From: Chiloscyllium plagiosum
Taxonomy: Eukaryota
Length of the DNA stretch: 64,000 nt
Assembly: GCF_004010195.1 (NCBI RefSeq)
Contig: NC_057726.1
Coordinates: forward strand, 70,009,468 to 70,073,467
Reading direction: 5' to 3'
The first letter of the stretch is position 1. Each line of letters begins with the position of its first letter. The position numbers and the translations under genes were made by a program. This document shows positions 13,624 through 56,090 of this stretch, piece by piece. Below the pieces are notes generated by a model that ran no database searches, was not told the DNA's origin, and saw only the letters and a list, made by a program, of their open reading frames with translations.

Positions 13624-16600
13624 GAGAACATAGAACATAGAACATTACAGCGCAGTACAGGCCCTTTGACTCTCGATGTTGCGCTGACCTGTCAGACCAA
13701 TCTGAAGCCCATCTAACCTACACTATTCCATGTACGTCCATTTGCTTGTCTAATGACGACTTAAATGTATTTAAAGTTGGCGAATCTACTACCGTTGCAC
13801 GCAAAGCATTCCAAACCCTTATTACTCTTTGAGTAAAGAAACTACCTCTGACATCTGTCCTCCATCTAACACCCATCAATTTAAAGCTATTCACCCTCGT
13901 GCTCACCGTCACGATACTTGGAAAAAAGGCTCTCCCTGTCAACCCTCTCTAACCCTTTGATTATCTTATATGTCTCTATTAAGTCACCTCTCAATCTCCT
14001 TCTCTCCAACGAAAACAGCCTCAAGTCCCTCAGCCTTTCTTCATAAGACCTTCCCTCCAGGCAACATCCTAATAAATCTCCTTTGCACTCTTTCCAAAGC
14101 TTTACATCCTATTTATAATGCGGTAACCATAACTGTACACAATACTCCAAGTGCGGCCGCACCAGAGTTTTGTACAGCTGTAGCACTGTCTCATGCATTG
14201 GAACTCGATCCCTCTGTTAATAAAAGTTAAAGCTCTGTATGCCTTCTTAACAACCCTGTCAACCGGGGTGGCAACTTTCAAGGATCTATGTACCTGGACA
14301 CCGAGATCTCTCTGCTCATCTACACTACCAAGAATCTTACCATTAGCCCAGTACTTTGCATTCCGGTTACTCCGACCAAAGTGAATCACCTCACACTTAT
14401 CCACATACAACTCTATTTGCCACCTCTCAGCCCAGCTCTGCAGCTTATCTATGTCTTTCTGTAACCTACAACATCTTTCGTCACTGTGCACAACTCCACC
14501 GATCTTAGTGTCATCTGCAAATTTACTAACCCGCCCTTCTACGCCCTCATCCAGGTCGTTTATAAAGATGGCAAACAGCAGTGAACCCAACACCAACCCT
14601 TGCGGTACACCACTAGTAATAGACTCCAGCGTGAATACTTCCCATCAAACACCACCCTCTGTCTTCTTTCAGCAAGCCAATTACTGATCCAAACTGCTAT
14701 ATCTCCCACAATCCCATTCCTCTGCATTTTGTACAATAGCCTACTGTGGCGAACCTTATCGAACGTCTTGCTGAAATCCATATACACCAGATCAACCGGT
14801 TTACTCTCATTTACCTGTTTGGTCACCTCTCAAAGAACTCAATAAGGTTTTTGAGGCACGAGCTACCCTTCACAAAACCATGCTGACTATCCCTAATCAA
14901 ATTATTCTTTTCTACATGATTATCCTATCTCTTATCACCTTTTCCAACACTTTACCAACAACTGAAGAAAGGCTCACTGGTCTATAATTACCTGGGTTGT
15001 CTCTACTCCCCTTCTTGAACAGGGGAAACACATTTCCTATCCTCCAGTCTTCTGGCACTATTCCTGTAGACAATGAAGATTTAAAAATCAATGCCTAAGG
15101 CTCGGCAACCTCCTCCTTGGCTGCCCAGAAGATCCTAGGATAAATCCTATCCGGCCCAGGGGATGTATCTATTCTCACACTCTGCAGGGTTTCTAATATC
15201 TCTTCCTTGGGAACCTCAATCTTACCTAGTCTAGTAGCCTAAATCTCAGTATTCTCCTCGACAACATTGTCCTTTTCTAGAGTGAATACTGTTGAAAAAT
15301 ATTCATTAAGTGCTTCCCCTAGCTCCTCTGACTCCACTTACAACTTCCCACTACTATCCTTGATTGGCCCTAATCTTACTCTCATTATTCTCTTATTCCT
15401 TAAATACCTATAGAAAGCCTTGGGGTTTACCCTGATCCTATACGCCAAAAAATTCTCATGTCTTCTCCTGGCTCTTCTGAGCTCTCTCTTGAGGTCTTTC
15501 CTGGCTACCTTGTAACCCTCAAACGCCCTAACTGAGCCTTCACATCTCATCCTAACATAAGCCTTCTTCTTCCTCTTGACCAGAGATTCCACTTGCTTCG
15601 TAAACCATGGCTCCAGCGGTCTACAACTTCCTCCCTGCCTGACAGGTACATACTTATCTAGGGCACACAGGAGCTTTTCCTTGAATAAGCTCCACATTTC
15701 TAATATGCCCATCCCTGCAGCTTCTTTCCCCATCCGATGCTTCCTAAATCTTGCCTAATCGCATCATAACTGCCTTTCCCCCAGCTGTAATTCTTGCCCA
15801 GTGGTATACACCTATCCCTTTCTATCACTAAAGTAAACATAATAGAATTGTGATCGCTATCACCAAAGTGCTCACCCACTTCCAAGTCTAACACCTGGCC
15901 AGACTCATTACCCAGTACCAAATTTAATGCGGCTTCATCCCTTGTTGGTCTGTCTACATACTGTGTCAGGAAGCCCTCCTGCACACACTGGACAAAATCT
16001 GACCCATCTATAGTACTCATACTATAGTGTTCCCCGTCAATATTTGGAAAGTTGAATTCCCCCATGACAACTACCCTGTCTCTCTCATTCCTATTGAGAA
16101 TCATCTATGCTATCCTTTCCACTACATCTCTGGAACCAATCGGAAGATTGTAGAAAACTCCCAACAGGGTGACCTCTCCTTTCCTGTTTCTAACCTCAGC
16201 CCATACTACCTCAGTTGACGAGTCCCCAAACATCCTTTCTGCAACTGTAATACTGTCCTTGACCAACAATGCCACACCTCCCCCGCTTTTATCATCTTCT
16301 CTGTTCTTACTGAAATATCTAAATCCTGGAACTTGCAACAACCATTCCTGTCCCTGCTCTATCCATGTCTCTGAAATGGCCACAACATCGAACTCCCAGG
16401 TACCAACCCATGTTGCAAGTTCACCCATCTTATTCCATATGCTCCTGGCATTGAAGTAGACACACTTCAAACCAACTTCTTGCTTGCTGGTGCCATGTTG
16501 TGTCTCTAAAACTTGATTTCAGAGCTCCCTACTCTCAACCTTTTCTATACTTTAACTACAATATTGGTTCCCATCCACCAGCTGGATTAGTTTAAACTCA

Positions 16601-30300: not shown

Positions 30301-30690
30301 AGAGGAGATTTACAGGGATGCTGCCTGGATTGGACGGCATGTCTTATGAAGAAAGGTTGAGGGAGCTTAGGTTTTTCTCACTAGCACTAAGAAGGATGAG
30401 AGGCAACTTGATAGAGGTGAGAAGCATCAATATAGTGAATAATCAGAGACTTTTTTCCCAGGGCAGAAATGGCTATCACAAGGAGGCACAATTTTAATGT
30501 GATTGGGGGAAGGTTGAGGGTAGATATCAGAGGTCGGTTCTTTGCACAGGGTGTGGTGGCTTCGTGGAATGGATGATATTAAAATGAAGGGCACATAGGA
30601 TAGTTTGATCCTAGAGTACGATAAAAACTTGGCAAAACATCATGGGCTAAAGAGCCTGTACTGTTCTGCACTGTTTTATGTTCTATGTGA
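27390..30690 (+). mobile_element. Degenerate CR1 LINE fragments (interrupted by PLE 28047-29570)
   Basis: DVVHIDFSQAFDKVPHG, GIPQGSDLGPLLF, KFPDDTKVGG, RTHLEYCVQF; tail GTTTTATGTTCTATG. Confidence 0.9.
28047..29570 (-). mobile_element. 5'-truncated Penelope-like element
   Basis: HIKTAIPYGQALRLHWICSDEEERD (RT C-terminus) and HSCYSANVVYLICCRQGCPEARYIGETEQ (GIY-YIG); internal (TG)n; short GTGAGG duplication at 28041-28046 / 29571-29576; same terminus as 20185 and 40540. Confidence 0.9.
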
Positions 30691-31059
30691 TCCATTTGGG
30701 ATCAAGAAAAGGATAAATCAGGGTACTTACTAACTGGTATGAATTCAAATAAAGTGAATGTCCAAATAGACTTGGTGGTTCATCTGGAAAGGTCTTTAAA
30801 ATGCCATGAGAGGTTCAGAAAGTAATCAAAAAAGCTAAAGAAATGCTGGCCTTGATACATCGATGATTGGAATACAACGGGTCGCAAATGTTCCAAACTC
30901 CATTCCACCTCTGGCAATGAATTCAAAACAGTTAGTGATTTTAAATCTGAGATAGATTTTGTTTTATGAATAGTCAGTGACACACATTGCATGATTTTTT
31001 TCATTGGAACGTAGATGATGGTGATTTTCATGAAGCAGATGGGGACTTCAGATTTGAGT

Positions 31060-31710
31060 AAGAGAGGTTAAACATTTCTGTGTATACTCTTGCCTGCTGG
31101 TCTGCACTGGATCTGAATGTATGGCCAGGGACTCCGACAGGAGGTGGAGAAGTCAACTTTTCCAGTATAACCCTCTCTCAGGAATGGAGGTGGTGTTAGG
31201 GAGAGCTGCAGATAAAGAAGATGGGATAAGGGTTATGGATGGAGAGAGGGGTGGAGGGATGAGGTAGTGATAGGTGAATACAGGTGGTGGATATGACGTG
31301 GTTGGTTAATGGGACGAGTGGACCAATTTAACATCTGCTGCAGTGACTGTGGGAACAGGTGCATCTGCGACTGTTGTGATAGGTGACATGGTTTCAGTAA
31401 CCTTCTGTTCAAAGTGACCACAGAATGCATTGAGATCATTCAATAGGAACGTCGTGTTGCCTGCAATTCCATTTGCCTTTCCTTTGGAAGCTGGTGTAAG
31501 CCTTGCCACAAATGATGGGTGTCCGTGTGGTTGGTCTGGGTGTCAAGCTTAGACTTGTATTGCCTCTTGCAGCTCTGATGGTCTTCTGAAGGTCATAGTT
31601 GGATTTTCCCAATTGCTCAGGGCTTCCCGACTTGCACTGCGCTGACCTGGACTTCAGTATGGAGTGGTTCTCCCGGTTCATCCATGATTTCCGGTTGGGA
31701 GACCCTCCCA
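31060..31710 (-). mobile_element. Rex1/Babar-like LINE fragment
   Basis: PNRKSWMNRENHSILKSR...SNYDLQKTIRAAR and LLNDLNAFCGHFE...VPTVTAADV resemble the linker region of Rex/Babar ORF2 (family assignment from recall). Confidence 0.6.
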
Positions 31711-31733
31711 CTCATGAAAAACAGAAAAGTAGG

Positions 31734-31755
31734 AAGGTTATATTTCGTACATATG
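31734..31755 (+). pseudogene. Possible leader exon of gene 1 with ATG lost (AAG)
   Basis: AAG GTT ATA TTT CGT ACA TAT G|GT is 22 nt, phase 1, same length as the gene 2 leader, and preceded by a similar GAAAAACAG; joined reading xVIFRTYVCLQLALSVSSG looks like a signal peptide. Confidence 0.35.
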
Positions 31756-32754
31756 GTATTAGTAAGGTAATATCTGGCATCATGTGTACAATAGTGCTCT
31801 TGTCATTTAAGGAAAGATGTAAAGGCTTTGAGAGCAGGCCAGAGATGATTTACCAGAATAATATTTCGAAGAGACCCATTGATTTATGAGGATTAGTTGG
31901 AACGTCCAAGCTAAGCTTTTAGAAGAATAAGTCCAATTGACTGAAACATATCGAATCCAAGGTGGGTCTTGGCAGGGTTCATGTTATCAGAATGTTTACA
32001 ACTGAGGGAGGTTGGAGAATTAATGGCAGTTGCATAAATGCGAAGACTCCTCCATGTAACACATCGCTGAGGAGAGCATCTTATTCTAAAACCGAAAGAC
32101 TTATTTCTTTACATCGCATCACACTTCCTCGAAAGGTGGGGAAGCAGAGTATTTGATTTTTTTTTAAAAATCAACCTATATAGATGTTTGTTCATCGCAG
32201 TGGGGGGTGGGAATGGTGGTCTGACGGTCTTAAAATTCATCGTTGCTTGACTCAGTTAGGAATATTAAATGTGATTATTTGAAAGAACACACTGATGTTT
32301 GTTCTGCTCATGTAGTCCACACATCCCCTACAGAGGGAATGACTGGCTTGAATGATCAGCTCGAGCCGTAGACAGCGAGTGGCCAACTGTTGCACTGAAC
32401 TTCAGCAAAAGGAACAAAAAAGAGTCACGTTCCTGATCAATGAACCGGATGTTAAGCTGAACTCTGACACTGTCTGTCCAACGCACTTTCAAGTTATTGC
32501 AAACTATCAGGCAGTTCACGCCCTGTCTCTCCAGCAAATAGATCAACATGTTCCTGAGTATTGCACTTTTCTGTAGATTTATTCAGGCATCAATTTTCCC
32601 AGGTATTCTCTCCTTTTCTACAGTATATTGTCTTTCCGTAAAGTCGATCTGTTATTTAATCTTTTTTTTAATATATCGTGTACTGTTCTCCTTTGGACAG
32701 TTTAAATCAATTACTGAACTCCACTCTTTTAACTCTTTTATTTAATCCTGTTAG

Positions 32755-33098
32755 TTTGTTTGCAACTGGCTCTTTCTGTAAGTTCTGGGGTAATCTCGGA
32801 TAAAGTGACCCAGTTACCAGGGAACATGACTAAAAGTGTCGGTGCAAATATGTCATTCGATTGCTCGCTTCGTTTATTTTCAAGTCGGCCACGCTGTTAA
32901 GGTAACTTGGTGGAAGCAAGGTGATTCTTATTATCTACACGCGGAACAAGATGGCCGAAAAGTAACTGGCCACAAAAATTAGGTGGTTTTCTTCAGATAA
33001 TCCATGTCTGTGTACAGGACAGAGGAATGTACTATTGCACAATCGTCCATCAAGCCAAATTGATTGGAAACAGAACAGGGTACAATTAAAAGTGTGTG
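32755..33098 (+). pseudogene. Ig V-set (VJ-type) exon, frameshifted
   Basis: ttag| CLQLALSVSSGVISDKVTQLPGNMTKSVGANMSFDCSLRLF /fs/ QVGHAVKVTWWKQGDSYYLHAEQDGRKVTGHK /fs/ LGGFLQIIHVCVQDRGMYYCTIVHQAKLIGNRT /fs/ VQLKVC g|gt; canonical C, W and DxGxYxC; aligns with 54028-54360. Confidence 0.9.
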
Positions 33099-33937
33099 GT
33101 ATATATGAAAGCAAGAAGGGAAGCGATTCTCGGGTGTGCTTGGAAAAGTTCACATTACAGGATTTATTAAACATGTATTTGATGTTGCATGTTCTTCAAT
33201 GGCAAGTTGACGTTTTTGTCCAACCGTAATTATCCTTGAACTGAGTGGTTTCCTTGGTCAACTGGGAGAGTTGTTGAGAGGCAGCAACGTTGCTGTATGT
33301 TTTGAGTGACATAGTGTCCAAGCAGGTCCGAATGGCAGGCGGTGTGCGTACGCTCCTTCGAGACATCTCCACAGTTCCTGATACATGCCTACATTTTAAT
33401 TGCATCGCTGACTGCTGTACTTCATGTTCAGAGTTTCACTAGCTTAGAATGATGTCTCAGCAGTTTTACCTGAATTATACTGCCGTGGGACATAAACAGG
33501 AATCTCAAGTACTATTGCAATATGATGAAAAGATACCTGCCCTGATCAAGGGTCATCCAAACGTTAACTTGCTCTCTCTCCGTGGGTGCTACCTGACCCG
33601 CTGTGATCGCCAGCATTTGTTGCTTTCAGTACAGATTCCAGTATCTGGAGTAATTTGCTGCGACATTTCAACGATCTTGGTTAAGTGCAATAGCCTGTCG
33701 CGGGCGACACAGATTTGATCATATTTGATGATTTATTTTTAACATCCTCTTTGCTCAAAGTCGACAGTTGAGAAGAAGGTTCCCTGGTGCCCAAGTTTTC
33801 ACCCTGTCTTTTTCACAGATGCTGCCAGACTTGTTAAGGTTCTTCAGCAATTTCTGTTTATTTTTGTTGATGACGTTTCTTGGCGGGTTTATTTTAAAGC
33901 GAAAGTGACGATTGCAGATGCTGGAGGGTAGGATCAA

Positions 33938-34064
33938 GAGTGTGGTGCTGGAAAAGCACAGCAGATCAGGCAGCATTCCTGATGAAGGGCTTTTTGCCTG
34001 AAACGTCGATTTTTCTGCTCCTCTGATGCTGCCTGACCTGCTCTGCTTTTCCAGCACCACACTC
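33938..34064. mobile_element. PLE terminal fold-back fragment with a hammerhead core in the loop
   Basis: 39-bp inverted arms 33938-33976 / 34026-34064 enclosing CTGATGAAGGGCTTTTTGCCTGAAACGTCG. Confidence 0.75.
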
Positions 34065-34604
34065 CATGCTCATTTTTTTTGACGGTGTAATTTTAATGGG
34101 TAAATATTAAAATTTTGAAAGCTGATATTTCTAAAATATAAAAAACTGCTGGAGCCACCGTCCTGTACATTCCACATGCTTTTGCCTTGCAATAAGTAAG
34201 TGACTACGTTGGCTTCCGTGTCAGTTATGGATCAGTTATTTTTCCCCTCTGTTGTTATGTCGTTTCCACCGCTGCATTATTGCACCACCAGCGATAGCAA
34301 ATCATGAATCCAATTCCAGAGCCTCTCGACAGTTATTTCCAACAGAAAAACTGAGATCTGTAACAACAGCGGTCCACGTTTTCTTGCCCGTGCTTTGTCC
34401 GGGGATGAGTTAATATTCCCGTTGATACTGTACTATGTTCGAGTCCTAGCACCAACAGCGCGCGTTGTCCAACCCACACCACCATGAGCACCTTCCCCCA
34501 CAACTGGACAGTAACTGTCCAGCAATGGGCAGAAACAAAAGATTGGGTTGTAATCCTCTTCTGATGTCGAGGTAATTTCTTTTTCTTCCTGTTCACTTTC
34601 CTCG

Positions 34605-34914
34605 TTCCACCGACTCCACTGAATATTCTCTCAGCAGCCTGGAAAAGAGCCATCTGTGACCCTTGCTGTTTTATGCTCCACAGCTCCCTTTTACCCGAGG
34701 GATACCAGTTTTACTTGGTACAAAGATGGCAGTAAAACTACAACAGGAATCAGTACAGTCATTTGAGCAACAGACAACAGATGATACGAAGCATCCAGCT
34801 GGTTGGAAGAAACACAGGCAATCCGATCCAGAACTGTTTATACCTGCATGGTATCCCACAGCACCGTCCAAAGTTCAGCTGCAGTCAGTCACATCATAAT
34901 GAAGGACAACCCGG
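34605..34914 (+). pseudogene. Ig C1-set exon, inactivated
   Basis: PPTPLNIL /fs/ PGKEPSVTLAVLCSTAPFYPRDTSFTWYKDGSKTTTGISTVI*ATDNR*YEASSWLEETQAIRSRTVYTCMVSHSTVQSSAAVSHIIMKDNP; C1 motifs CxxxxFYP, W, YxCxVxH; TGA at 34764 and 34782; acceptor reads CG and donor reads AA. Confidence 0.9.
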
Positions 34915-34969
34915 AAAAGAATTCTACTGGAACCGTATCATTAATAACGCACATCAAATGTGTAATACA

Positions 34970-35300
34970 TAGAATCATACTGCACGGAAACAGACCCTCA
35001 GGTCCAACCAGTCCATGCCGAACCTCATCCAAACTAAACTAGTCCCATCCGCCTGCATTTGTCCATAATCCGGCCAAAACTTTCCCATTTATGTACTTAT
35101 CCAAATGTGTTTTAAACGTTGTAATTGTCCCCACATCCATTACTTCTTCAGGAAGTTCATTCCACATGTGACCCAAATTCTGTGTAAAAACATTGCCCCC
35201 ATACATTTTTAAAATCTCTCTCCTCTCACTTAAAAATGTGCCCCTTGTCTTGTAATCCCCCTTTTCTAGAGAAAAGACAACTACCCTTCACCGTATCTGT
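34970..35300 (-). mobile_element. CR1 LINE 3' end
   Basis: CATAGAATCATACTGCACGGAAACAGACCCT tail followed by degenerate ORF2 end on minus strand. Confidence 0.8.
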
Positions 35301-35891
35301 ACGGAAACTTTTGAGAGTAACATGCCCATCTCTTAACGAGAAATATGCACTATCTTGAGTGAGAGTGCACCAATGGTGGGCAAGCGAGGACCGATGAAGC
35401 AGTGGAGAGGGTTTTGAGTTAGTTATCCAAGTGGACACCCATCAGGATCTGAATGAGATACATTTGAGGTTTGGTCTTAACTCTGGTGTTTGGCAGGGAA
35501 TGTCTCACTAACAGATGGTTCCAAGAGGCATTTGTACTGCCATTGGTTTTCCTCAAAACAGTCCAGTAGCCTTTCTACAGTAAAATCATGGACGATTTAT
35601 CTGCCACTCCAGTTTAATGAGCTCCTGGAGACTGAGAAAACATTCGCCACGATTTATATTCTCTGCAAGTTCCCTTCAGAAAATGGAGATTTCAGACAAA
35701 TATGTAAAGATTGTTATCTCAGTCTGAAAATCCAAAGGGAAGTGGAAAACTTAAGTTCAGTTCTGTAATTGAATATGCATCCCATTAAGACATAACCAAA
35801 ATAATTTAATGTACCATAACTTTCCACTCACATGTTAACTGATACGAACAGTAAGCAATGTTAATTGATGGTTGTGATTTGGTTGTTTTAG

Positions 35892-35996
35892 ACTGTGTGT
35901 TCACAAAGTACTTGATGATTTCTGCAACTGTATCAGGTGGATTATTGGTGGTCAGCCTCATCATGATGAAGCGATATGCAGCCATGAAAAACATGG
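35892..35996 (+). pseudogene. Transmembrane exon of gene 1
   Basis: ttttag|AC...ATG G|gtagg, 105 nt, phase 1-1, open: CVFTKYLMISATVSGGLLVVSLIMMKRYAAMKNM; about 20 uncharged residues then KR stop-transfer, no charged residue within the span. Confidence 0.8.
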
Positions 35997-37289
35997 GTAG
36001 GAAGTTATTTAATCTTTTCAAATACACAACGCCCAAATGGAATGTCAATTTTAACTTTGCACCATATGTCCAACTTTTCTATGTGGAACTGAATAGGTTA
36101 AACAATACTTAGCTTGTCTGACATGGCCAGTGCAATATAAGGTCAATGGTGTACAATATTCAAATTTCATCCAACCTCCCATTGATACGGGCATGCCAAA
36201 GGTGCTTTATTACAAAAGGAAGATTATTTCATTATCTGGGATTATTGATTTTGGGGAATTACTCTGCAGGTTTCCCAGCATGCATTCATTTTTGAACAAT
36301 CAATTTCTGAATATCAAAATATGTTAGTAATCAAATATTGGGCTGCATTTTTCTGAGGAATGGCAATCTCACACAGATTGGCATCCTGACCCTTCTATTA
36401 CAGATGTAAAGGGCTCCATATTTTTGAAAGGAGCTTTTGATCAAGTATCCATCAGAAACACAGAGTTCTGCTTCCATTGTAATAGTTCTCTGGTAACACA
36501 GACCAGTCAGGGAAAAGCAAATTAAGTCTCCTTTTCACAGCAGTCACTTGCCCCTTTCTGAAGTTTCGCTGTCCAGAACTGACAGCCACTTTTGCACCAG
36601 CTGTCAAGTGGTAGGTACCAAATGTAAGTATGAGGTTAGGGTGCTGCGAGGGCATGCTGCCATCTGGATGAGGTTCATCCAAGTGGGATGAAGTAGCAAG
36701 CTGATATGAATTAGGGTGGCAGGTGGGAATTATGCCAAATGTGCAGGTGGCCAATTGGGTGCCGGGTATTCTGCTATGGTGTAGGATTTCAGGTGGGTAG
36801 AATGCCAAATTGGGAGGGAACACTTTGACAGGAAATAGGATGCCAGGTGAATAGGATAGTGGTATGGCACATGAGTAACTTCATTATGACAGGGCCAAGA
36901 TAGCTAATAAGCCAGTTTAGTGATACAGTGCTTAAAGTGCATCAGGACAGTTGAAAAATTGGGGCCAGCACAAGGGAGTGATTATCTTATCCGAAAGAAG
37001 TCAGGTCTCCCCATGGGAAGGGCATGGATTGGTCCTAGGAGGGGCAGTGACTGACCATACTGGAAATTCGGCAAGAGGGATATCATGTCCCAAACGAGGA
37101 AGTGGGCAACTTGTCCCAGGAATGTGGAGTCAGATTGGGTTTGAAGTGAGGGAAGGAAAGAGCTTCTCCAGGGCAGGTAATGGTATTGGTGCCAAGTCTG
37201 AAGTGAGGAAAGTGGATTGCTGTTTCCTGTGTCGGGGAAGATGATCCTGAACCAAATGGGTCACAGGTAGATTTTATTTATGGACCATA

Positions 37290-37650
37290 TAAGGTTGAGG
37301 GGTGACCTTACCAAGGTTTATAAAATCATGAGACGTGTAGCTAAGGTGAACAGAAAATGTCCTTTCCCTGGGGTGGGGAAGATCACCGGAGGAGAAAGAT
37401 TTAACAGGGACCTGACGGACATCTTTTTCACACTGAGGGTGGTTTGTGTGTGGAATGATCTGCCAGAGGAAGTGATAGATGCAAGTACAGTTACATCATT
37501 TAAAATATGTTTGGATAGACAAATGGATAGGAAAGCTTTAGAGGGATTTGGACCAAATGCAGGCTGTGGGATTAGTTTAGTTTGGGAAACTTGTTTGGCA
37601 TGGACTGGTTGGGCTGCAGTGTCTGTTATCATGCTGTATGACTCAACGAC
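37290..37650 (+). mobile_element. CR1 LINE 3' end
   Basis: RLRGDLTKVYKIMR...FFTLRVVCVWNDLP. Confidence 0.9.
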
Positions 37651-38739
37651 TCTGTCCAGAGACGGGGAAGTGGAGCTATGTCTGCAGTAGGGAAAAAATG
37701 GTGATGTATCTAGCTTTGGGGGATGGGAATGCGTGAGGTTTAATCTGGGGAAAGGGGAGACTCTGTTTTAAAGGTGTGGAGGCAGATCAGCTTCAGAGAT
37801 GGTAAGAATGGGCAGCATCCTGCGGGAGAGTCCCATCAGACCCATTGTGGGGAAAGGGTGGTTGCTGGAACCAAGAAAAACAAAGCAGTGAAGGAGGAGC
37901 TGGTCCAGAAAACATCAGGGTTTTGTCATTTCCACAGGCCAGCATGGTGTCAGGTACCAGGCAGAGGAAGGTGATTTCTGGTCAGGATGTCTGAGCAAAT
38001 GTTGCCTGTCAGTCATATTGTTATTCAGGAGTTGGACTACATCTTCAATAGTATAAGGTTTGATGTGATTGTCTGTATTTAATTTAATCAGGGACCTCCA
38101 AATTCTATTTACGTGGATGCTTTCAGAGGGTTCTAAGTGTAGAGAAATTGCCCAGTGGAACCTTCAATTTCCTGGCAATTCTTTTGGAGTCTTCTATATT
38201 GAGCAGTCCACGATTGTCTTCATGTTCAGCTCCCATCCATGATGAAAGGTAATTTGTCTGGCACTGGACAATGTGGGCCAATATCTTTTTAAAATTGTGG
38301 TACGTGGATTATGTTATGACTTGCGTTAAGTTTTGCAGAAATGCATTTCCTGGATTGCTATTCATTTTAAAATTTATTTCATACCACAGTAGTGAAAACC
38401 ATTGATGACAAATCGAATAATGATGAACACAAGGCAAGTTTTTTTTTACACAAAATATAACTTGTACGTAACTAATTAGCATTTAGTGCAATAGCTATAT
38501 TTTATTTTGCTGCTGTAATTATTTATGCAAAACAGCACAGATTGTATTCAATGATACAGGATTAAAACAATAACATCAATAGGTCAGATGGTGTCTAATG
38601 TAGCTGTAATATTTTGATTGTGGATATGCTAATTAAGAGTGTGTACAGAACAGAATGTTCACTTTTGCCTCTTAGGAAAAGAAACCACTGTAATGTGCTT
38701 AGTTTGTATGTAGCCTAGTCCAAAATATAGACATTGACT

Positions 38740-38960
38740 TTTTTCCTCCAACTGACATTAACTTACAAGCCCAACTTTACCAGTCAAGCAGGAGTTGACA
38801 ATGATATTTGCCATTATCAGTGATGTCTCCAGATGCAGAATTAATAGCACGTTTTTCTGAATGTTGAATTTTGGCGACGGCAGTTTTGTGATTTTTTGAT
38901 GCACTCTGTGCCAGACTGAAAAAGTGATTCGTGATGTCAAGAACAGCAGGAAACATCAAA
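38740..38960 (-). pseudogene. Antisense fossil Ig-domain fragment
   Basis: *CFLLFLTSRITFSVWHRVHQKITKLPSPKFNIQKNVLLILHL /fs/ DITDNGKYHCQLLLD /fs/ GKVGL: C-x13-W and DxGxYxC at Ig-like spacing; needs two frameshifts. Confidence 0.45.
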
Positions 38961-39259
38961 TATAAGATTGTTCTTGCTTTCATTTCTCTTCAAATCAGAT
39001 CATGTGAGACACTTGTGAATTTAGAAAAAATCAAAAATTTCAGCCTCCAACTCTTTGGATTGAATTGACTAATTCCTTCCATTTACTACAATGTTAAAAA
39101 GGTATGAAGAAGCTTCCTCTAAACTTGAGGCTTATTTGTCCATTATTTCCCATCTCGTGAAATCAACTCATAGAAAATTGTTGGCATGAAATCGCAGTTT
39201 TCCAATAACATCAGGTTACGATTCTGACAGTGCCACTGACAGACTAAGCACATTAAAGC

Positions 39260-39296
39260 AGTTTCCTTTTCATAAGCGGCAATAGCGAACTTCCTG
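39260..39296. promoter_or_regulatory. ISRE consensus plus ETS-type site
   Basis: AGTTTCCTTTTC (39260-39271) fits AGTTTCNNTTTC; ACTTCCTG (39289-39296) is CAGGAAGT on minus. Motif match only. Confidence 0.3.
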
Positions 39297-40182
39297 TTCT
39301 GTACAAACTCTTAATTAGTGTGTTCACGACCAAAAGAAGAACATTTCCAGCTCAAAGAATGTTCTTCTCATCATAGCTCAACTACAAGACATTCTCATGC
39401 ATTTTTAGCAATCAGTCACAGGGGAGAATAGAATATTACCTTGCAAATAACGGTCTTGTAGAAGATCATCAAAGATGTCTTCGCAAAACTGACAATTGGG
39501 TATGGCATTGATAAGACCATGTTTGTGATAGAATTGAGGTTTTACTGCCCTGCCTAAGGGAGGACATGCTTAACACTGGTGGAATGCAACTCATGTAAAG
39601 TAGGCCGGTTCCTGCAGTAAATGGATAGTTTTATTATGGAAGATTGTGTCGAGTGGGCCAACATTTCTTAGTGATTTGATGAATAACACATGATCGAGTT
39701 GAAAAATGTTTGGTTTGTAAGGAATTTGACAGACTTGATGCAAGTACGTTTTTTCCTTGGATGGGTTTGATTCATGGATTTATACTGAATAGAAGAAACA
39801 TATCTTTGTTCAAAAAGTCTAGAATGATAGGGATTTTGTACCACATAGAACTTTGGACGTTCACTCGTTAACTAGACTCAAGAAATGTATCCAAGGTTTA
39901 GGACACTTGAGTAATTAAAGCTATTGTTTGGAAAATCACTAGGGATTAATCAAGAACAGAACTGACTGCAAGGCAAATAAAAGTGTTTTGTTTATCACTG
40001 ACACTTAGTAAACATGCTTCCAGGAGACTTTGTAGATTTTGTATTTATTTTATTGGTATCCATAATTAGAATTCCTCATCCTGTTTACCCCATCAGTTTT
40101 AAACTTAAAGTGGTAAAAAGAGAGACAGGCATGGATATAGGTATAAACTTACATTTATCTAGATTTTTTTCAACTCATACAG

Positions 40183-40279
40183 GGAACAACTGATGCGATG
40201 ACACCTTATGCTGCACTAAATCTGAACAATTTGCAGAAGGCACCAAGACCAAGGCATCAAGAAATGGCAATATGCCTAG
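40183..40279 (+). pseudogene. Cytoplasmic exon A of gene 1 (ITIM-like motifs)
   Basis: atacag|GTTDAMTPYAALNLNNLQKAPRPRHQEMA /fs/ YA*|gt; the donor position is inferred. Confidence 0.75.
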
Positions 40280-40343
40280 GTCGGGGAAAGACACAGATCA
40301 CAATGACACCATATAACAGTAATTGAGAATCTATTAGAGCTCA

Positions 40344-40540
40344 AAGTTAAAAATCACACAACACCAGGCTATAGTCCAACAGGTTCAGAGCGACGGCCCT
40401 TCATCAGGTGATCACCTGATGAAGGGCCGTCGCTCTGAAAGCTAGTGTGCTTCCAATTAAACCTGTTGGACTATAACCTGGTGTTGTGTGATTTTTAACT
40501 TTTTACACCCCAGTCCAACACTGGCATCTCCGAATCATGA
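40344..40540. mobile_element. Palindromic PLE-derived insertion with 13-bp TSD
   Basis: CTATTAGAGCTCA at 40331-40343 and 40541-40553; perfect 56-bp palindrome 40384-40439 plus outer inverted arms. Confidence 0.9.
40413..40447 (+). ncRNA. Minimal hammerhead ribozyme motif (second PLE family)
   Basis: CAC-CUGAUGA-AGGGC-cguc-GCUCU-GAAA-GC-UA-GUG: stem I CAC/GUG, palindromic AGCU at stem III, CUA triplet. Confidence 0.6.
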
Positions 40541-40703
40541 CTATTAGAGCTCAGTGTATAAAATATTTACAAATTTACATTTTAAAATCTGTTGCATTTA
40601 CACTAATTAATTGAGACACTGTCTATTTTAATTGCTTTGCCTAACAGCTGAATCCAAGTGACCGAAAATTGAACGAACGATATTCTGAAAATTGTTTTCA
40701 TAG

Positions 40704-40850
40704 ACCAGGACAAGACCTCAGGATCATAAAATGACCTAAGCTGCTTTAGACTTGCCAGCCCCCAGGAAAACAGAGAAAACAAATTACAAGGAAAAGAATA
40801 CAGAGTATGCTCAGGTTCACTTGGAAAAACAAAGACAAGCTTTGCGATAA
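40704..40850 (+). pseudogene. Terminal cytoplasmic exon B of gene 1 (ITIM + ITSM-like)
   Basis: ttcatag|TRTRPQDHKMT*AALDLPAPRKTEKTNYKEKNTEYAQVHLEKQRQALR*; TAA at 40737 occupies the expected Tyr position; TEYAQV matches TxYxxV. Confidence 0.85.
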
Positions 40851-40920: not shown

Positions 40921-42800
40921 AATACAGAACACAGAACACGGAATACAGAACACGGAATATGGAACACGGAACAGTACAACGCAGTACAAGTCCTTCAGCT
41001 CTCGATACTGTGCTGGCCTTTTATCTTACTCGAAGATCAGACTAAACAGAATACCCTTCATGATATGATCTTCCATATGTCCACCTAAGAGTCACTTAAA
41101 TACCCTAATGTATCTGACTCTACTACCACTGCTGGTAGTACTTTCCACACACACACCCATCTCTCTGTGTAAGAACTTACCTCTGACATCACTTCTTTAC
41201 TTTCCTCCAATTACCTTAAAATTCTGCCTCCTGGTCTATGATAGACGTTTCTGCCATGGGAAGAGGACTCTGGCTATCCTTTCTATTTGTGCCTGTCAAC
41301 ATCTTATACACCTCTATCTAGTCAAGTCTCATCCTTCTTCAGTCTAATAAGAAAAGCCCTCGCTCCCTCAACTTTCTCTGTAAGACATCCCCCCCCCCCC
41401 CCCCCCAGTCTATGCAGCATTCTGGTAAATCTCCTCTGCACCCTCTCTAAAACTTCCACATCTTCCACATCTTTCCTATAATGAGGCAATCAGAACTGAA
41501 CACAATATTCCAACGGTGGTCTCAGCAGTACTGTATAGAGCTGCAGCAAATCCTTATGGTTCTTCATCTCAATCCACCTGTTAATGAAAGCCAACACACT
41601 ATATGCCTTCTCAACTACCCTATCAACTCGGGTGGCAACTTTGAAGGATCTACGGACATGGACCCCAAGATTCCTCTACTCCTCCGCACTGCCATGAACC
41701 CTATCTTTAATCCTGTATTCTGCATTCAGATTCCACCTTGCAAAGTGAATGACTTCACACTTTTCTAGGTGAACTACATCTGCCACTTATTAGCCCATAT
41801 CTGCATCCTGCCACTGTCTTGTTGCAACCTACAACAGCCCTCGACACCATCCACAACTCCACTAACCCTTGTGTCATCGATAAACATACTAACCCACCCT
41901 TCCACTTTCTTATCCAAGTCATTTATAAAAATTACAAAGAACAGACGCCCCAGAACTAATCCCTGCAGAGTACCACTGGTCACCAAGCTCCAGCCTGATT
42001 ACTTTTCATCTAAAACCATCCTCTGCCTTCTCTGGGCCAGCCAATTCTGTATCCAGACTGCCAGATTTCCCTGTATCCCATGCCTCCTTACTTTCTGAAT
42101 GCCCCTACAATGGGGATCGTTCTCAAATGCCTTGCTCAAATCTATGTATACCACATCCACTGCTCTACCTTCAAAGATGTGTTTTGTCACATCTTCAAAG
42201 AATTACATAAGATTTGTGAGGCATGAAATGCTCTTCACAAAGCCATGCTGACTATCTCTAATCAAACTGTGGTTTTCCAAGTCATCTTAAATCCTGTCTC
42301 TCAGAATCCTCTCCAATGCTTTGCCCACCACAGATATAAGACTGACAGGTTTGTAATTCCTCAGATTATCCCTAATCCCTTTCTTCAACAAGGGAATAAC
42401 ATTTGTTACCCTCCAATCATCTGGCACTACTTCGGTGGACAGTGAGGAAGCAAAGATCATCAGCAAACATGCAGTAATCTCTTCCCTCGCTTCCTGTAGT
42501 AACCAAGGGTATATCATGTAAGGCCAAGGGGATTTATCTATCCTTACGTTTTTCAAAATGTTCAGCAGATTCTCCTTCCTATCATACCATATTATATCAA
42601 TCTGTTTCATGCTGTCCTCAGAAATATCAATGTCCCTCTCAGTAGTGAATACTGATGCAAAGTACTAATCAAGGACCTCCCCTACCTCCTCTGATGCCAG
42701 CGCATGTTCCCCTTACTATCCATGATTGGCCTACCCTCACTCTGGTCATCCTCTTGCTCCTCACATAAGCATAGATTGCCTTAGGGTTTTCCTTAGTCCT
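40921..42800 (-). mobile_element. 5'-truncated CR1 LINE
   Basis: NYKPVSLISVVGKALERILRDRI, VYIDLSKAFE, FIDDTRVSG; degenerate tandem tail at 40921-40975; poly-C at 41388-41406. Confidence 0.92.
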
Positions 42801-52541: not shown

Positions 52542-52858
52542 AGATTACATTAGATTAGATTACATTACAGTGTGGAAACAGGCCCTTCGGCCCAACAAGT
52601 CCACACCGACCCGCCGAAGCGCAACCCACCCATATCCCTACATTTACCCATTACCTAACACTACGAGCAATTTAGCATGGTCAATTCACCTGACCTGCAC
52701 ATCTTTGGATTGTGGGAGGAAACCGGAGTATCCAGAGAAAACCCACGCAGACACAGGGAGAATGTGCAAACTCCACACAGTCGCCTGAGGTGGGATATGA
52801 ACCCGGGTCTCAAGCGCTGTGAGGCAGCAGTGTTAACCACTGCGCCACCGTGCCGCCC
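52542..52858 (-). mobile_element. HE1-type V-SINE nested in the hAT element
   Basis: Reverse complement of the 56091-56414 family; ends CACCGTGCCGCCC. Confidence 0.92.
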
Positions 52859-53461: not shown

Positions 53462-54027
53462 GTAAAGGCAACACTTTTGTTTCTCCTTCACAGCTCCCCG
53501 TCCAGATTTACAGCAAGAGATTCTCCACTTGCCAGCAGAAGCTGTGTGACATCACGGACAGTTCCGAAACGATATTGCAGACACAGGGGCACCTTTGCTC
53601 TCATTGTCTCGACAGTATTTCCATTTCCAACTCTGTGAGTTAGCCATTCACGCTGGCGGATATGTTGGAGACTCCATCATTTAGCGACATATCTTTCCTG
53701 GGAATTTTGTATGTAGGTGGGCATTTAGATTTCATGTTAATTATTAAACTTCCCTGAGCAAGAACTTGTGTCCGATATCCTACACAAGCTAGCTTTCTGC
53801 TACTTGAACTTCATTAAATATTTTCATATTGAGTGTTCTTTGCAGAAAAGAATGATGTGAATGTGAAAAGCAATATTGGTTATGGTAATTTAATTAGGAA
53901 ATGCATTCGTTAGCAGGATAGATAGTTAAACTTAGATGGTTAAGCAGCATTACTAATGTAACAAAAGACGGGATGCACAATATTAGTTTTAGCAGTGTTT
54001 TTGTTTCCCTCTGTGGCTATGATTTAG

Positions 54028-54360
54028 TTTTGGATATTTTGTTGTCAGTTTCTGTCTGCAGCTCTGGCGACCATGGCTGGAATCTGGCACAAACACCGGC
54101 GCGCCAGGGTGGGAATGTTCTCTTCCGGTGTCCTTTCCCTTTCCATGTTAATCACTCGGCGGTAACTGCTTACTGGTGGAGAGACGGGAACAAGAGCTTC
54201 CTGCAAGCAAACGGCAGGAAAAGGTTCACTGTGAGGAGAGGCGGCGCGTACCTTCATGTTCTGAATGTGACTGTTGCGGATGCCGGTGTGTATCACTGTG
54301 CCGTCAAATATCAGCATCGAACAGTTGGGAAAGGAACCGAGATGCAAATCCTCGTGTCTG
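54028..54360 (+). CDS. Intact Ig V-set (VJ-type) exon of SIRP-like receptor, gene 2
   Basis: tttag|...TCT G|gtaagc, 333 nt, phase 1-1, open: LDILLSVSVCSSGDHGWNLAQTPARQGGNVLFRCPFPFHVNHSAVTAYWWRDGNKSFLQANGRKRFTVRRGGAYLHVLNVTVADAGVYHCAVKYQHRTVGKGTEMQILVS; C, W, DAGVYHC and J-like GKGT. Confidence 0.9.
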
Positions 54361-55261
54361 GTAAGCGTTGCTAAAAATTATAAACGGGAACATTTTCGGA
54401 GATATTGGGATTAGGCCATTCAGCCCCTCGAGCCTGTTCCCCCATTCAATGAAATTATGGCTGAACTTCAGCCTAACTCCACTTATCTATGTTTGGACTA
54501 TATCCCTTAATATCTTTTGCTTAAAAAAAATTAATAAAATCTCAGTTTAATATTAACGACAATCATCCACTACTGTGTGTAGAAGAGTTCAAACCTCTAC
54601 CACCTTTTGTGTGTAGCAGCGCTTCCAAACATCTCTCCTGAAAGGTTTCACTCTCATTTTTAAACATTCCAATGTTGTTTGTTCAATATATAACAGTCCT
54701 GAGTATAAAACAGTACATTTCTCTAATGCAGTAACTGGAGCAACATGCATTCAACAATGGTTAGGTTTCTAGGGACAGGACCAGAATCCCTGATAATAGA
54801 AACAACAAAAAGAAAATCAAAGTTGGGAATAAAGACCTTTTTTAAAATGTGAGTATTCTATGTTTGGGATGGATAATTGCAGGATTATTCACAATTTTAG
54901 AAATATAACATGAGCTGTTTTAACACATCATTTAAGCAAGTCAAAAAAAAACTTCATTTAGGTTTGCTTGGTTACTAGAAATTTATAGATTTTTAAAGCT
55001 TGTTTAACTTATTGGGTATAAAAACACTTACTCAGAATTGGAATGCTGAGACAAGGGGAGAGGTGTTGGTTTTTTGAGATCCGAACAAAATCCTTCATTC
55101 GCAATCAATTGCAACCGAGAAGCCGCTTGAGATTACACCAGTATAGGGTCATAATCTCTGCCACCTCAGTTCGGCTCAGAGCTTGACTCTGGACGAAGGT
55201 CGCAAACAAAACCTGCTGCATGTGAAAATAACAGTGCTCGTACAAATACTGATAAATGGAA

Positions 55262-55770
55262 AATGTTGTGAAACTTCAAAGGTTCAGAAAAGATTTACAA
55301 GGATGCTGCCAGGGTTGGAGGATCTGAGTGACAGGGAGAGCATGAACAGGCTAGGGCTGTTTTCCCTGGAGCATCGGTGGCTGAGGGGTGACCTTATAGA
55401 GATTTACAAAATTAGGAGGGGCATGGATAGGAAAAATAGACAAAGCCTTTTCCCTGGGGTCGGGGAATCCAGAACGAGAGGACATAGGTTTAGAGCGAGA
55501 GGAGAAAAAATATAAGAGGTCTAAGGGGCAACTTTTTCACGCAGAAGGTGGTACGTGAATGGAATGAACTGCCAGAGGATGTGGTGGAGGCTGGTACAAT
55601 TGCAACATTTAAGAGGCATTTGGATGGGTGTGTGAATAGGAAGGGTTTGGAGGGATAAGGGCCTGGTGCTGGAAGGTGGGACTAGATTGGGTTGGAATAT
55701 CTGGTCGTCATGGACGGGTTGGACCGAAGGGGCTGTTTCCATGCTGTACATCTCTATCACTCTATAATTG
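55262..55770 (+). mobile_element. CR1 LINE 3' end
   Basis: KVQKRFTRMLPGLEDL...LRGDLIEIYKI; same subfamily as 9640-10110. Confidence 0.92.
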
Positions 55771-56090
55771 TGGAACAGATACAAGTGATAACACATGTGG
55801 TAATATGCTATAAAATGAAACTTTAAGATGAAAACTTTGTTGGGAAGAAGTGCAACTGTTTTCCAATACAACGACCGCCCCCACCCCCCCCCCCCCCCCA
55901 ACCATGATATAGTCATGAAACAAATCTGTTAATGACTCTAACATGCTCCAACAGCCCTCTGCACACACACACGACAAATAGCTCCACACAGGTGGGAGCA
56001 CTTCAGTCAGTCACTCTATCCATATCCCTTCCCACCATAGTGCCCAATGGTTGACTATTTACTAATGGGCAGCTGTAGCAATGCATTAGT

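What the first reader, a model, noticed from the sequence alone, without database searches (positions are those of the whole stretch)
31734..40850. Hidden SIRP-alpha-like V-C1-TM-4xTyr inhibitory receptor in a shark, reconstructable from a pseudogene
Seen: five colinear exons largely invisible to the ORF track give V, C1, uncharged TM and a tail reading TPYAALNL...YA*...MT*AALDL...TEYAQVHL. Established: mammalian SIRP-alpha has V plus C1 domains and the alternating motifs xYADL / EYASI / xYADL / EYASV that recruit SHP-1/2. Inference: this is a cartilaginous-fish SIRP-like family with a single C1 domain and the same tandem ITIM/ITSM arrangement. A phase 1-0 exon between the TM and exon A is required but not confidently located.
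Basis: partly seen in the sequence, partly recalled or inferred. Interest (0 to 1): 0.8.

Follow-up and report, generated by a model that had tools for sequence, protein, structure and literature searches.

The report
Dead copy of shark inhibitory receptor
This stretch is a broken, non-functional copy of a shark immune-receptor gene whose many intact relatives are already listed in public databases, so it is an ordinary pseudogene rather than a hidden new receptor.

Summary
Each best matches one intact horn-shark protein, P0208 (XP_067905935.1): C1 E 6e-26, exon B E 1e-8, exon A E 1.6e-7, TM E 1e-3.

The locus is dead. It has at least five frame changes, four substitution stops (one at an ITIM tyrosine) and no AG before the C1 exon. 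The phase 1-0 mini-exon could not be found.

It is a decayed member of a large cartilaginous-fish family of V(J)-C1-TM receptors. Some members have ITIM-type tails; others have short tails and an Arg in the TM. The family is in RefSeq for 15 species. In one search, 20 of 46 hits carry SIRP-type names; the rest carry tapasin, Ig-lambda, B7-H6, CD276 or MHC-II names.

Kinship to SIRP is unresolved. There is one C1 domain, not two. The C1 scores higher with UrIg2 and IgM than with SIRP-alpha, and the V domain has no SIRP among its top 60 PDB hits.

First readers noted the same gene type at eight other places in this genome (unchecked).

The parts
32548..32602 (+). Leader exon candidate: an ATG, 18 codons plus 1 base, then donor CAG|GTATTC (phase 1).
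   Evidence: It is the best of all ATG-to-phase-1-GT candidates in 30501-32700 by similarity to family leaders (score 32-33; next locus 25). By my reading, 7 of 18 residues match the P0208 N-terminus without gaps. DNA seen. It is phase-compatible with the AG at 32753-54, but not with the AG at 32781-82, which fits relatives better in length.
32755..33095 (+). Germline-joined V(J) exon, decayed. The Cys, WW-K and YYC landmarks are kept. The J-like motif reads GNRTG where the family has GNGTG. The frame changes three times.
   Evidence: Frame-aware alignment to P0208, P0105 and P0178 scores 223-255, with frame changes near 32877-32895 and 32971-72. The third change lies between IGNRTG (stop at 33087-89) and QLKV in another frame. 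tblastn with P0208: 60 bits, E 3e-13. Pfam V-set is only weak on the third piece (E 0.16).
34602..34959 (+). C1-set exon, decayed. No AG acceptor lies before VPPTPL, there is one frame change near 34626-34637, and there are in-frame TGA stops at 34764-66 and 34782-84. The donor is uncertain: GT at 34935 is phase 0, GT at 34960 is phase 1.
   Evidence: Pfam C1-set E 6.5e-5 and 0.081 on the two halves. P0208: 99 bits, 54% identity, E 6e-26. Lesions, DNA (nearest upstream AG at 34570-71). High-depth DNA contigs of close copies carry two extra bases after 34626 and a non-stop codon at 34782-84.
35892..35996 (+). Connecting-peptide and transmembrane exon. It is open, 105 bases, phase 1-1, with an uncharged hydrophobic run followed by KR..K.
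   Evidence: Hydrophobicity scan. Splice sites ttgttttag| and G|GTAGGA. P0208: 47% identity over 34 residues, E 1e-3. Alignment score 62 against shuffles at 23.8 +/- 5.2.
40183..40279 (+). Cytoplasmic exon A. It holds the first ITIM-like motif (TPYAAL). After ..RHQE the frame changes, and the relic of the family's TVYAQ reads QYA followed by TAG as the last codon, just before the donor. The exon is 97 bases, not a multiple of three.
   Evidence: DNA. P0208: 58% identity, E 1.6e-7. Alignment score 97 against shuffles at 21.7 +/- 3.3. Contigs of runs X3 and X4 span 40269 by at least 32 bases on each side, and only 40269 A>C is listed there, so the TAG and the frame change stand in two other samples.
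40704..40850 (+). Cytoplasmic exon B. The second ITIM has TAA (40737-39) in place of its tyrosine codon. The intact TEYAQV lies 23 residues further on. The natural stop is at 40848-50.
   Evidence: DNA. P0208: 45% identity, E 1e-8. The stop aligns to Y of LTYAAV, and the alignment score is 105 against shuffles at 26.4 +/- 3.6. This exon was outside the stretch given to read laying.

Best explanation
Window 32548-40850 (+) is an unprocessed, intron-bearing pseudogene. It is a dead member of a large multigene family, specific to cartilaginous fish, of type I membrane receptors.

The family's architecture is: split leader, one germline-joined V(J) exon, one C1-set exon, a TM exon, a short linker exon and two cytoplasmic exons. 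In intact inhibitory members the tail is two tandem units. Each unit is an ITIM (consensus LTYAxL) followed exactly 23 residues later by a second tyrosine (TVYAQT or TEYAx[ILV]). Sister genes in the family have short tails and an Arg in the TM.

Shown: the exons, their homology, the lesions, the family and its taxonomic range.

Inferred from motifs and established ITIM biology: intact members bind an unknown ligand through V. They are then phosphorylated on the paired tyrosines and recruit tandem-SH2 phosphatases (SHP-1/2). The Arg-TM members signal through an ITAM adaptor, making a paired inhibitory/activating system that turns over by gene birth and death.

This copy cannot make a receptor. 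Whether the family is a true relative of SIRPs or an independent antigen-receptor-like lineage is open.
For: - Colinear exon matches to one protein, P0208 from Heterodontus francisci: V E 3e-13, C1 E 6e-26, TM E 1e-3, exon A E 1.6e-7, exon B E 1e-8. Shuffle controls.
- Lesions: three frame changes in V, one in C1 and one in exon A. Substitution stops at 34764-66, 34782-84, 40277-79 and 40737-39. No AG before the C1 exon.
- The linker exon was not found in 35997-40182: best HMM score 2.6 bits, nothing.
- Family extent: 46 of 46 hits and 54 of 56 hits are cartilaginous fish. In one search the score then drops from 209 to 59 bits.
- Pfam finds V-set plus one C1-set stretch in 9 of 10 members scanned; the tenth, P0023, has no C1.
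- Of 85 distinct members, 47 have long tails; 38 of those carry an ITIM and 10 a strict ITSM. 24 have short tails, many with Arg in the TM.
- The Tyr-Tyr spacing is 23 in 47 of 93 qualifying pairs.
- In the C1 tree our exon sits with P0105 and P0150, then with P0178 and P0129 (SH-aLRT 88 and 90). Its end branch is 0.53 against a median of 0.17.
- No other family exon lies between these exons.
Against: - The DNA runs do not confirm the window's own letters at the C1 lesions. Where contigs cover 34646-34705 (X1, X4) and 34776-34795 (X3), only variant contigs are seen, and these lack the frame change and the second stop. Their depth is 25-320 against roughly 5-20 in the unique flanks. I therefore read them as paralogous copies, but an intact allele at this locus is not excluded by these data.
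- Expression was barely tested. Only about 2 in 100 of one single-cell RNA run was read, and no read lay on an exon.
- The tree support is not starred, and only 98 columns were used.
- SHP recruitment and ligand binding are inferred from motifs only.
Confidence: 0.88

Rival explanations
1. The gene is functional. On this reading the frame changes and stops are assembly errors, or a null allele private to the assembled animal.
For: At 34646-34705 and 34776-34795, the only contigs of three other DNA runs that lie there differ from the window. They carry two extra bases after 34626 and a sense codon at 34782-84. The first V frame change lies in a run of T.
Against: There are four stops by substitution in three exons, at least five frame changes in three exons, no AG acceptor for C1 and no linker exon. 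Exon A's TAG and frame change lie inside contigs of two other samples (X3, X4), with only 40269 A>C listed. The variant C1 contigs have depth 25-320 against about 5-20 in the unique flanks, as expected for multi-copy paralogues. The long end branch in the C1 tree fits relaxed constraint.
Confidence: 0.05
2. The tyrosine-motif exons belong to another gene, or are chance motifs, and are not part of the V/C1 gene.
For: No RNA joint was seen, the linker exon is missing, and 4.2 kb with repeat insertions separates the TM exon from exon A.
Against: All exons are on one strand, in the family's order, with matching phases (TM 1-1, A 0-, B 0). Each matches the same protein, P0208, best or nearly best. 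No other family exon lies in 33.1-53.6 kb. The next gene begins with its own leader at 53662.
Confidence: 0.02
3. The family is a true SIRP lineage: the cartilaginous-fish co-orthologues of tetrapod SIRPs, with one C1 domain as the older or a reduced state.
For: - 20 of 46 members carry SIRP-type names from the sources.
- SIRP-alpha (2wng) ranks fifth of 177,635 PDB sequences for the family profile. One stretch covers V plus d2 (61.3 bits), and d3 scores 47.3 bits from a shared VPPT.. start.
- The tail logic is the same. Mammalian SIRP-alpha has ITYADL, TEYASI and LTYADL (PMC5413580, passage). By my count of the peptide quoted in PMC5589908, an ITIM-to-TEY spacing of 24 residues, against 23 here.
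- The family has paired inhibitory members and Arg-TM members, like SIRP-alpha and SIRP-beta (PMC12975943, passages).
Against: - One C1 domain, not two.
- The C1 of P0178 scores UrIg2 (59.7 bits) and IgM (59-50) above SIRP-alpha d3 (44.2).
- No SIRP appears among the 60 shown hits of either V domain searched.
- A light-chain V-C scores above SIRP d1-d2 (68.2 against 61.3 bits).
- Source names are inconsistent.
- No tetrapod SIRP appeared, though the word filter may explain that.
- No tree with SIRPs and no synteny could be made here.
Confidence: 0.25
4. The family is an independent antigen-receptor-like V(J)-C1 lineage of cartilaginous fish, nearer to Ig, TCR and UrIg constant domains. On this reading it acquired a generic ITIM tail by convergence or exon shuffling.
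For: The top PDB matches are UrIg2 and Ig heavy-chain constant domains. The range is cartilaginous fish only at the sensitivity used. ITIM-plus-ITSM tails occur in many unrelated receptor families (established knowledge, recalled).
Against: The score differences are small and are not a phylogeny. SIRP-alpha is the best non-Ig, non-UrIg match. The fixed di-tyrosine spacing resembles that of SIRP-alpha (PMC5589908).
Confidence: 0.5

Closest known systems
RefSeq 'tyrosine-protein phosphatase non-receptor type substrate 1-like' proteins of cartilaginous fish. The nearest are Heterodontus francisci XP_067905935.1/XP_067905936.1 (P0208/P0150). Also close: Scyliorhinus canicula XP_038663089.1 (P0105), Mobula hypostoma XP_062923427.1 (P0178, named tapasin-related) and Hemitrygon akajei XP_072926686.1 (P0129, named Ig lambda-like).
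   Same: Same exon order and domain set: leader, V(J), one C1, TM, two tyrosine-motif exons. Identity to P0208 is 54% in C1, 58% in exon A, 45% in exon B and 47% in TM. They fall in the same sub-branch of the C1 tree.
   Different: The window's copy is broken in every large exon and lacks a recognisable linker exon. The relatives are predicted models, and I found no paper that describes them.
Mammalian SIRP-alpha/beta/gamma (PDB 2wng, 4i2x)
   Same: N-terminal V with a J-like G-x-G motif followed by C1-set. An inhibitory tail with alternating ITIM and TEY-type tyrosines about 23-24 residues apart. Activating partners with a basic TM residue (PMC12975943, PMC2785349, PMC5413580 and PMC5589908, passages).
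   Different: SIRPs have two C1 domains; this family has one. There is no specific sequence affinity of V, and only middling affinity of C1. CD47 binding and synteny were not tested.
UrIg / UrIg2, the non-rearranging shark Ig-like genes (PDB 9dmx; PMC12227049)
   Same: Germline-joined VJ exon with a split leader, followed by C1-type domains. It is the highest-scoring solved structure for both the family profile and the C1 domain.
   Different: UrIg has three C1 domains and is secreted. UrIg2 has nine C1 domains (PMC12227049, passages). That paper contains no ITIM, SIRP or tyrosine wording. The present family has one C1 and a signalling tail.
[quoted passage not shown] 2019) and teleost NITRs
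   Same: Non-rearranging VJ-type IgSF receptors, listed together with SIRP, CD8, CD79 and NKp30 (PMC11599192 passage; PMC10751288 passage and reference list).
   Different: Not compared. The PRARP paper is not held and no PRARP or NITR sequence was in hand. Anything beyond the two passages is recall.

Membership tests
Cartilaginous-fish V(J)-C1 ITIM/Arg-TM receptor family (RefSeq 'SHPS-1-like' and other names) | A V exon with family landmarks (C .. WWK .. DxGxYYC) and a joined J-like GNGTG..L.V | tested here: met
   All landmarks are present across three frames. The J motif is altered to GNRTG.
Cartilaginous-fish V(J)-C1 ITIM/Arg-TM receptor family (RefSeq 'SHPS-1-like' and other names) | A single C1-set exon starting VPPTPL.., with FYP..W.K.G and YTC.VSH | tested here: met
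   Pfam C1-set E 6.5e-5. 54% identity to P0208, E 6e-26. It is the only C1-like exon between V and TM.
Cartilaginous-fish V(J)-C1 ITIM/Arg-TM receptor family (RefSeq 'SHPS-1-like' and other names) | A TM exon of the family type, and a tail of two units each with 23 residues between tyrosines | tested here: met
   TM 47% identical to P0208. Exons A and B are homologous. The site of the lost Tyr codon to the Y of TEY is 23 residues, the family mode (47 of 93 pairs).
Cartilaginous-fish V(J)-C1 ITIM/Arg-TM receptor family (RefSeq 'SHPS-1-like' and other names) | The short linker exon between TM and exon A (phase 1-0) | tested here: not met
   Best HMM score in 35997-40182 is 2.6 bits, and no tblastn match. 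I read this as loss or decay in a pseudogene.
Functional protein-coding gene | An open frame through all exons and usable splice sites | tested here: not met
   At least five frame changes, four stops and no AG before C1.
SIRP family (SIRP-alpha/beta/gamma) | One V-set domain followed by two C1-set domains | tested here: not met
   One C1 exon at the locus. One C1-set stretch in 9 of 10 members scanned, none in P0023. The SIRP definition comes from PMC12975943 and PMC2785349 (passages).
SIRP family (SIRP-alpha/beta/gamma) | A cytoplasmic tail with ITIMs that recruit SHP-1/2 (alpha), and a partner with a basic TM residue (beta) | tested here: inconclusive
   Motifs and spacing are present in relatives, and as relics here. 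Arg-TM members exist. Binding was not tested, and such tails are not unique to SIRPs.
SIRP family (SIRP-alpha/beta/gamma) | Closest sequence relatives are SIRPs (orthology) | tested here: inconclusive
   For the family profile SIRP-alpha ranks fifth, behind UrIg2, IgA1 heavy chain and two antibody constructs. The C1 ranks UrIg2 and IgM first. No SIRP appears among the 60 shown V hits. No tree with SIRP sequences was possible.
SIRP family (SIRP-alpha/beta/gamma) | Conserved synteny with tetrapod SIRP loci; CD47 as ligand | not testable with these tools
The window holds only two family genes and repeats. Scan notes hold none of the seven neighbour gene names I recalled.
UrIg/UrIg2 | VJ followed by three or more C1-type domains; secreted, or with a long C-domain array | tested here: not met
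   One C1 domain plus a TM and a signalling tail. UrIg features are from PMC12227049 (passages).

The most novel reading that the evidence does not exclude
The family to which this dead copy belongs may be the surviving single-C1 form of the V-C1 inhibitory receptor that Hatherley et al. (PMC2785349) postulated as close to the antigen-receptor precursor. On this reading it is the sister lineage of SIRPs, and the VPPT-initiated C1 and the di-tyrosine unit of fixed spacing are shared ancestral traits. Tetrapod SIRPs would then have gained their second C1 by exon duplication. If so, cartilaginous fish would offer dozens of natural variants, both inhibitory and Arg-TM, for testing how such a receptor worked before or beside RAG-based rearrangement.
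Probability: 0.2. Interest if true: 0.6.

Novelty: new member of a known kind. Interest (0 to 1): 0.3.

Why it matters
The locus itself matters little. It is one more dead copy in a gene family that evolves by birth and death, and no reconstruction is needed because intact relatives are public.

The family is of moderate interest. It is a large set of non-rearranging V(J)-C1 receptors found only in cartilaginous fish, with members bearing ITIM-type tails and members with a short tail and an Arg in the TM. Automatic pipelines label it inconsistently: SIRP-alpha-like, tapasin-related, Ig lambda-like, B7-H6-like, CD276 and MHC II beta.

None of my nine answered paper searches brought up a description of it. 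Searches were poorly aimed, only listings were seen, and most subscription journals are not held. Supplements of the shark genome and MHC papers, which I could not open, may list such genes.

A proper phylogeny and synteny analysis could show whether SIRPs date back to the first jawed vertebrates. It would also give annotators one consistent name.

Tried and rejected
No family similarity there. A better candidate lies at 32548.
- **A second TM candidate at about 38473**. Rejected: it has no homology, while the candidate at 35.9 kb matches P0208.
- **Linker mini-exon.** Neither an HMM of 23 family segments run against all open segments of 35997-40182 nor a sensitive tblastn found anything credible. 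The weak match at 37383-37412 lies inside a high-copy repeat.
- **Family tail against the large protein set** (P0091 residues 262-368). Only 4 of 42 candidates passed, all cartilaginous fish. This says nothing about SIRP tails, because of the word filter.
- **Synteny words in the scan's notes.** None of seven neighbour gene names was met. MHC, TCR and Ig notes are on other pieces.
- **RNA support.** No listed run holds the stretch as RNA. In the one RNA run laid, reads lay only on repeats.
- **Paper searches.** brought up no description of the family. Searches (an acronym shared with other fields; threshold too loose) were wasted.

Full report
**What is there**

On the + strand between 32.5 and 40.9 kb lie six coding pieces in the order of an Ig-superfamily receptor gene.

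- **V(J) exon, 32755-33095.** It can only be read by changing frame three times. It then gives the landmarks of a V domain with a joined J-like end..FDCSL....VTWWKQGD....LQIIHVCVQDRGMYYC....IGNRTG....QLKV.
- **C1 exon, about 34602-34959.** Pfam C1-set scores E 6.5e-5 on its first half and 0.081 on its second, at colinear profile positions 5-47 and 58-85 of 86.
- **TM exon, 35892-35996.** It is 105 bases in phase 1-1, with good splice sites and an uncharged hydrophobic run followed by basic residues.
- **Exons A (40183-40279) and B (40704-40850).**

**Leader**

I add a leader candidate at 32548-32602: an ATG, 18 codons plus one base, then the donor CAG|GTATTC. It is the best of all ATG-to-phase-1-donor candidates upstream. 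By my reading, it matches the N-terminus of the nearest intact relative at 7 of 18 positions without gaps.

The leader/V junction is not clean. The phase-compatible AG at 32753-54 adds about ten residues compared with relatives. The AG at 32781-82 fits them in length but is out of phase, which suggests one more small indel.

**More than chance**

Searching exon by exon, every piece matches one protein, P0208 (Heterodontus francisci XP_067905935.1), colinearly:

| Exon | Bits | Identity | E-value |
|---|---|---|---|
| V | 60 | – | 3e-13 |
| C1 | 99 | 54% | 6e-26 |
| TM | 29.6 | 47% | 1e-3 |
| A | 42 | 58% | 1.6e-7 |
| B | 45.8 | 45% | 1e-8 |

These values are for the 9.5-kb locus as the database. 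With my own frame-aware aligner, the three short exons score far above 60 shuffles of the query:

| Exon | Observed | Shuffles (mean +/- sd) | Shuffle max |
|---|---|---|---|
| TM | 62 | 23.8 +/- 5.2 | 42 |
| A | 97 | 21.7 +/- 3.3 | 31 |
| B | 105 | 26.4 +/- 3.6 | 36 |

Across the whole window, family exons occur only here and at a second gene (53662 leader, 53961-54368 V, 63384-63802 C1). All other hits are repeat-derived.

**It is dead**

Lesions:

- V exon: frame changes near 32877-32895, near 32971-72, and at the J end (stop at 33087-89).
- J motif: GNRTG in place of the family's GNGTG.
- C1 exon: no AG in the 30 bases before it (nearest at 34570-71), a frame change near 34626-34637, and TGA stops at 34764-66 and 34782-84.
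- Exon A: 97 bases long, with a frame change after ..RHQE and TAG as its last codon where the family has Gln.
- Exon B: TAA at 40737-39 in place of the tyrosine codon of the second ITIM.

The family's 13-18-residue linker exon, needed to bridge the phase-1 TM donor and the phase-0 exon A acceptor, could not be found in the 4.2-kb intron. The best HMM score was 2.6 bits, and one search found nothing.

**Reads**

One call laid 34560-40559 on three DNA runs from three samples and one single-cell RNA run.

- **Exon A.** Contigs of X3 and X4 span 40269 by at least 32 bases on each side, and only 40269 A>C is listed. So the TAG and the frame change stand in two other samples.
- **C1 exon.** The evidence here is against me in part. 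The only contigs laid over 34646-34705 (X1, X4) and 34776-34795 (X3) differ from the window. They have two extra bases after 34626 and a sense codon at 34782-84. Their depth (25-320) is well above that of the unique flanks (about 5-20). I therefore take them for close paralogous copies, about 96% alike over 164 bases, and not for an intact allele. The window's own letters at the C1 lesions remain unconfirmed.
- **Not laid.** The V exon and exon B.
- **RNA.** Reads lay only on repeats, and only about 2 in 100 of that run was read. This says little.

**The family**

A whole-library search with the neighbour gene's intact V exon led to intact proteins with leader, V(J), one C1, TM and tail.

- A full-length member found 46 relatives at E <= 1e-5, all from cartilaginous fish.
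- A 24-sequence profile found 56 relatives at E <= 1e-8. Of these, 54 are cartilaginous fish. The score then falls from 209 to 59 bits (a catfish CD22-like and a sole MUC18).
- Fifteen species are represented, from the chimaera Callorhinchus to sharks and rays.

Names given by the sources:

| Name | Hits (of 46) |
|---|---|
| 'tyrosine-protein phosphatase non-receptor type substrate 1-like' | 18 |
| SIRP-beta-like | 2 |
| tapasin-related | 9 |
| Ig lambda-like | 4 |
| NCR3LG1-like | 3 |
| CD276 | 3 |
| MHC II beta-like | 1 |
| No informative name | 6 |

So public annotation already calls much of this family SIRP-alpha-like, but not consistently.

**How intact members are built**

Of the 85 distinct members in hand, 47 have a TM and a tail of 50 or more residues. 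Of those, 38 carry at least one canonical ITIM and 10 a strict ITSM. Another 24 have short tails, many with an Arg early in the TM and an acidic residue or His at its end. For 14, no TM was detected.

The tail is two tandem units. In each, an ITIM-type tyrosine is followed by the next tyrosine exactly 23 residues later; this holds for 47 of 93 qualifying pairs, in 53 of 85 proteins. In the window's exon B, the lost tyrosine codon and the Y of TEYAQV are also 23 apart.

From established ITIM biology I infer that intact long-tailed members recruit tandem-SH2 phosphatases, and that Arg-TM members pair with an ITAM adaptor. Nothing here tests that.

**Place of this copy in the family**

In a C1-domain tree, our exon (two stops as X) groups with P0105 (Scyliorhinus) and P0150 (Heterodontus), and then with P0178 (Mobula) and P0129 (Hemitrygon). 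SH-aLRT support is 88 and 90, neither starred. Its end branch is 0.53 against a median of 0.17, as expected for a decaying copy of a sub-lineage shared by sharks and rays.

The tree has 73 rows: 72 distinct domains plus our exon. They come from 82 proteins with a C1 hit of at least 60 bits and at least 75 profile positions; identical domains went in once. It used the quick method on 98 columns.

The neighbour gene belongs to another branch, with P0001 of Chiloscyllium punctatum (91-93% identical). So the genome is from a close relative of that shark. I did not determine the species.

**Is it SIRP?**

For:
- V with a J-like motif followed by C1.
- Paired inhibitory and basic-TM members.
- Alternating ITIM and TEY motifs, as in mammalian SIRP-alpha: ITYADL, TEYASI and LTYADL (PMC5413580, passage).
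- An ITIM-to-TEY spacing of 24 residues, by my count of the SIRP-alpha-derived peptide quoted in PMC5589908 (passage).
- SIRP-alpha (2wng) is the fifth-best of 177,635 PDB sequences for the family profile. One stretch covers V plus d2 (61.3 bits), and d3 scores 47.3 bits.

Against:
- SIRPs have two C1 domains (PMC12975943 and PMC2785349, passages). This family has one.
- UrIg2 (124 bits), IgA1 heavy chain (122 bits) and two antibody constructs rank above SIRP-alpha. A light-chain V-C scores 68.2 bits.
- The C1 of P0178 scores UrIg2 at 59.7 and IgM at 59-50 bits, above SIRP-alpha d3 at 44.2.
- Neither V domain searched has a SIRP among the 60 hits shown, of 642 and 259.

I could not make a tree with SIRP sequences, having none from a tool.

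UrIg and UrIg2 differ clearly: three or nine C1 domains, and no ITIM wording in that paper. PRARP, another non-rearranging VJ family named in PMC11599192 and PMC10751288, could not be read or compared.

**Verdict**

It overstates both novelty and the SIRP link.

The locus is an ordinary pseudogene, a new member of a kind already present in public databases. First readers of this scan noted the same gene type at eight other places in this genome, an activating-type TM exon just upstream of the window, and the neighbour gene in it. These notes are unchecked, apart from the neighbour's intact V and broken C1, which I saw myself.

Supplements of the papers were not opened and may list such genes.

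Noticed in passing
window 53662-63802 (+): A second family gene. It has a leader at 53662-53712 and an intact V(J) exon at 54063-54359. Its C1 exon (about 63387-63694) has a frame change and no AG acceptor in front. It is 91-93% identical to Chiloscyllium punctatum XP_072403667.1 (P0001), whose TM carries an Arg and whose tail is short. Its TM and tail exons would lie beyond the window's end.
   Followed up: partly
window 34600-34800: DNA contigs of three samples that lie on the C1 exon are variants of it: 6 substitutions and a 2-base insertion over 164 bases. Their depth is 25-320 against about 5-20 in the unique flanks. This points to several near-identical C1 exons elsewhere in the genome that keep the frame and lack the second stop.
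   Followed up: partly
window 34960-35360, 37160-37760, 40345-40560: High-copy repeats lie inside the introns. Two are LINE 3' tails, with open frames of the ..RGDL..VYK.. / ..WN.LP.. type on the - and + strands and depth up to about 29,000. The third is a SINE-like element with depth up to about 2 million. RNA reads on it run into poly(A) after 40473-76.
   Followed up: partly
family proteins: The distance between the ITIM tyrosine and the next tyrosine is exactly 23 residues in 47 of 93 qualifying pairs across chimaera, sharks and rays. The tail is two such units in tandem. Such a fixed spacing suggests binding by a tandem-SH2 partner.
   Followed up: partly
P0023: This family protein has V, TM and tail but no C1 domain, and its tail unit is duplicated. 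It is a natural C1-less form. Its source was not looked up.
   Followed up: no
P0064, P0005, P0105 against window 9228-9455, 14384-14536, 41771-41899, 7753-7812, 52607-52777, 56176-56346: Some public gene models of the family carry N-termini or C-termini that match reverse-transcriptase fragments or a dispersed repeat in this window. These are probably mis-predicted or exonised repeat sequence.
   Followed up: no
window 40269: A>C in the contigs of two other samples (X3, X4), inside exon A. This is either a polymorphism or a difference between animals in the dead exon.
   Followed up: no
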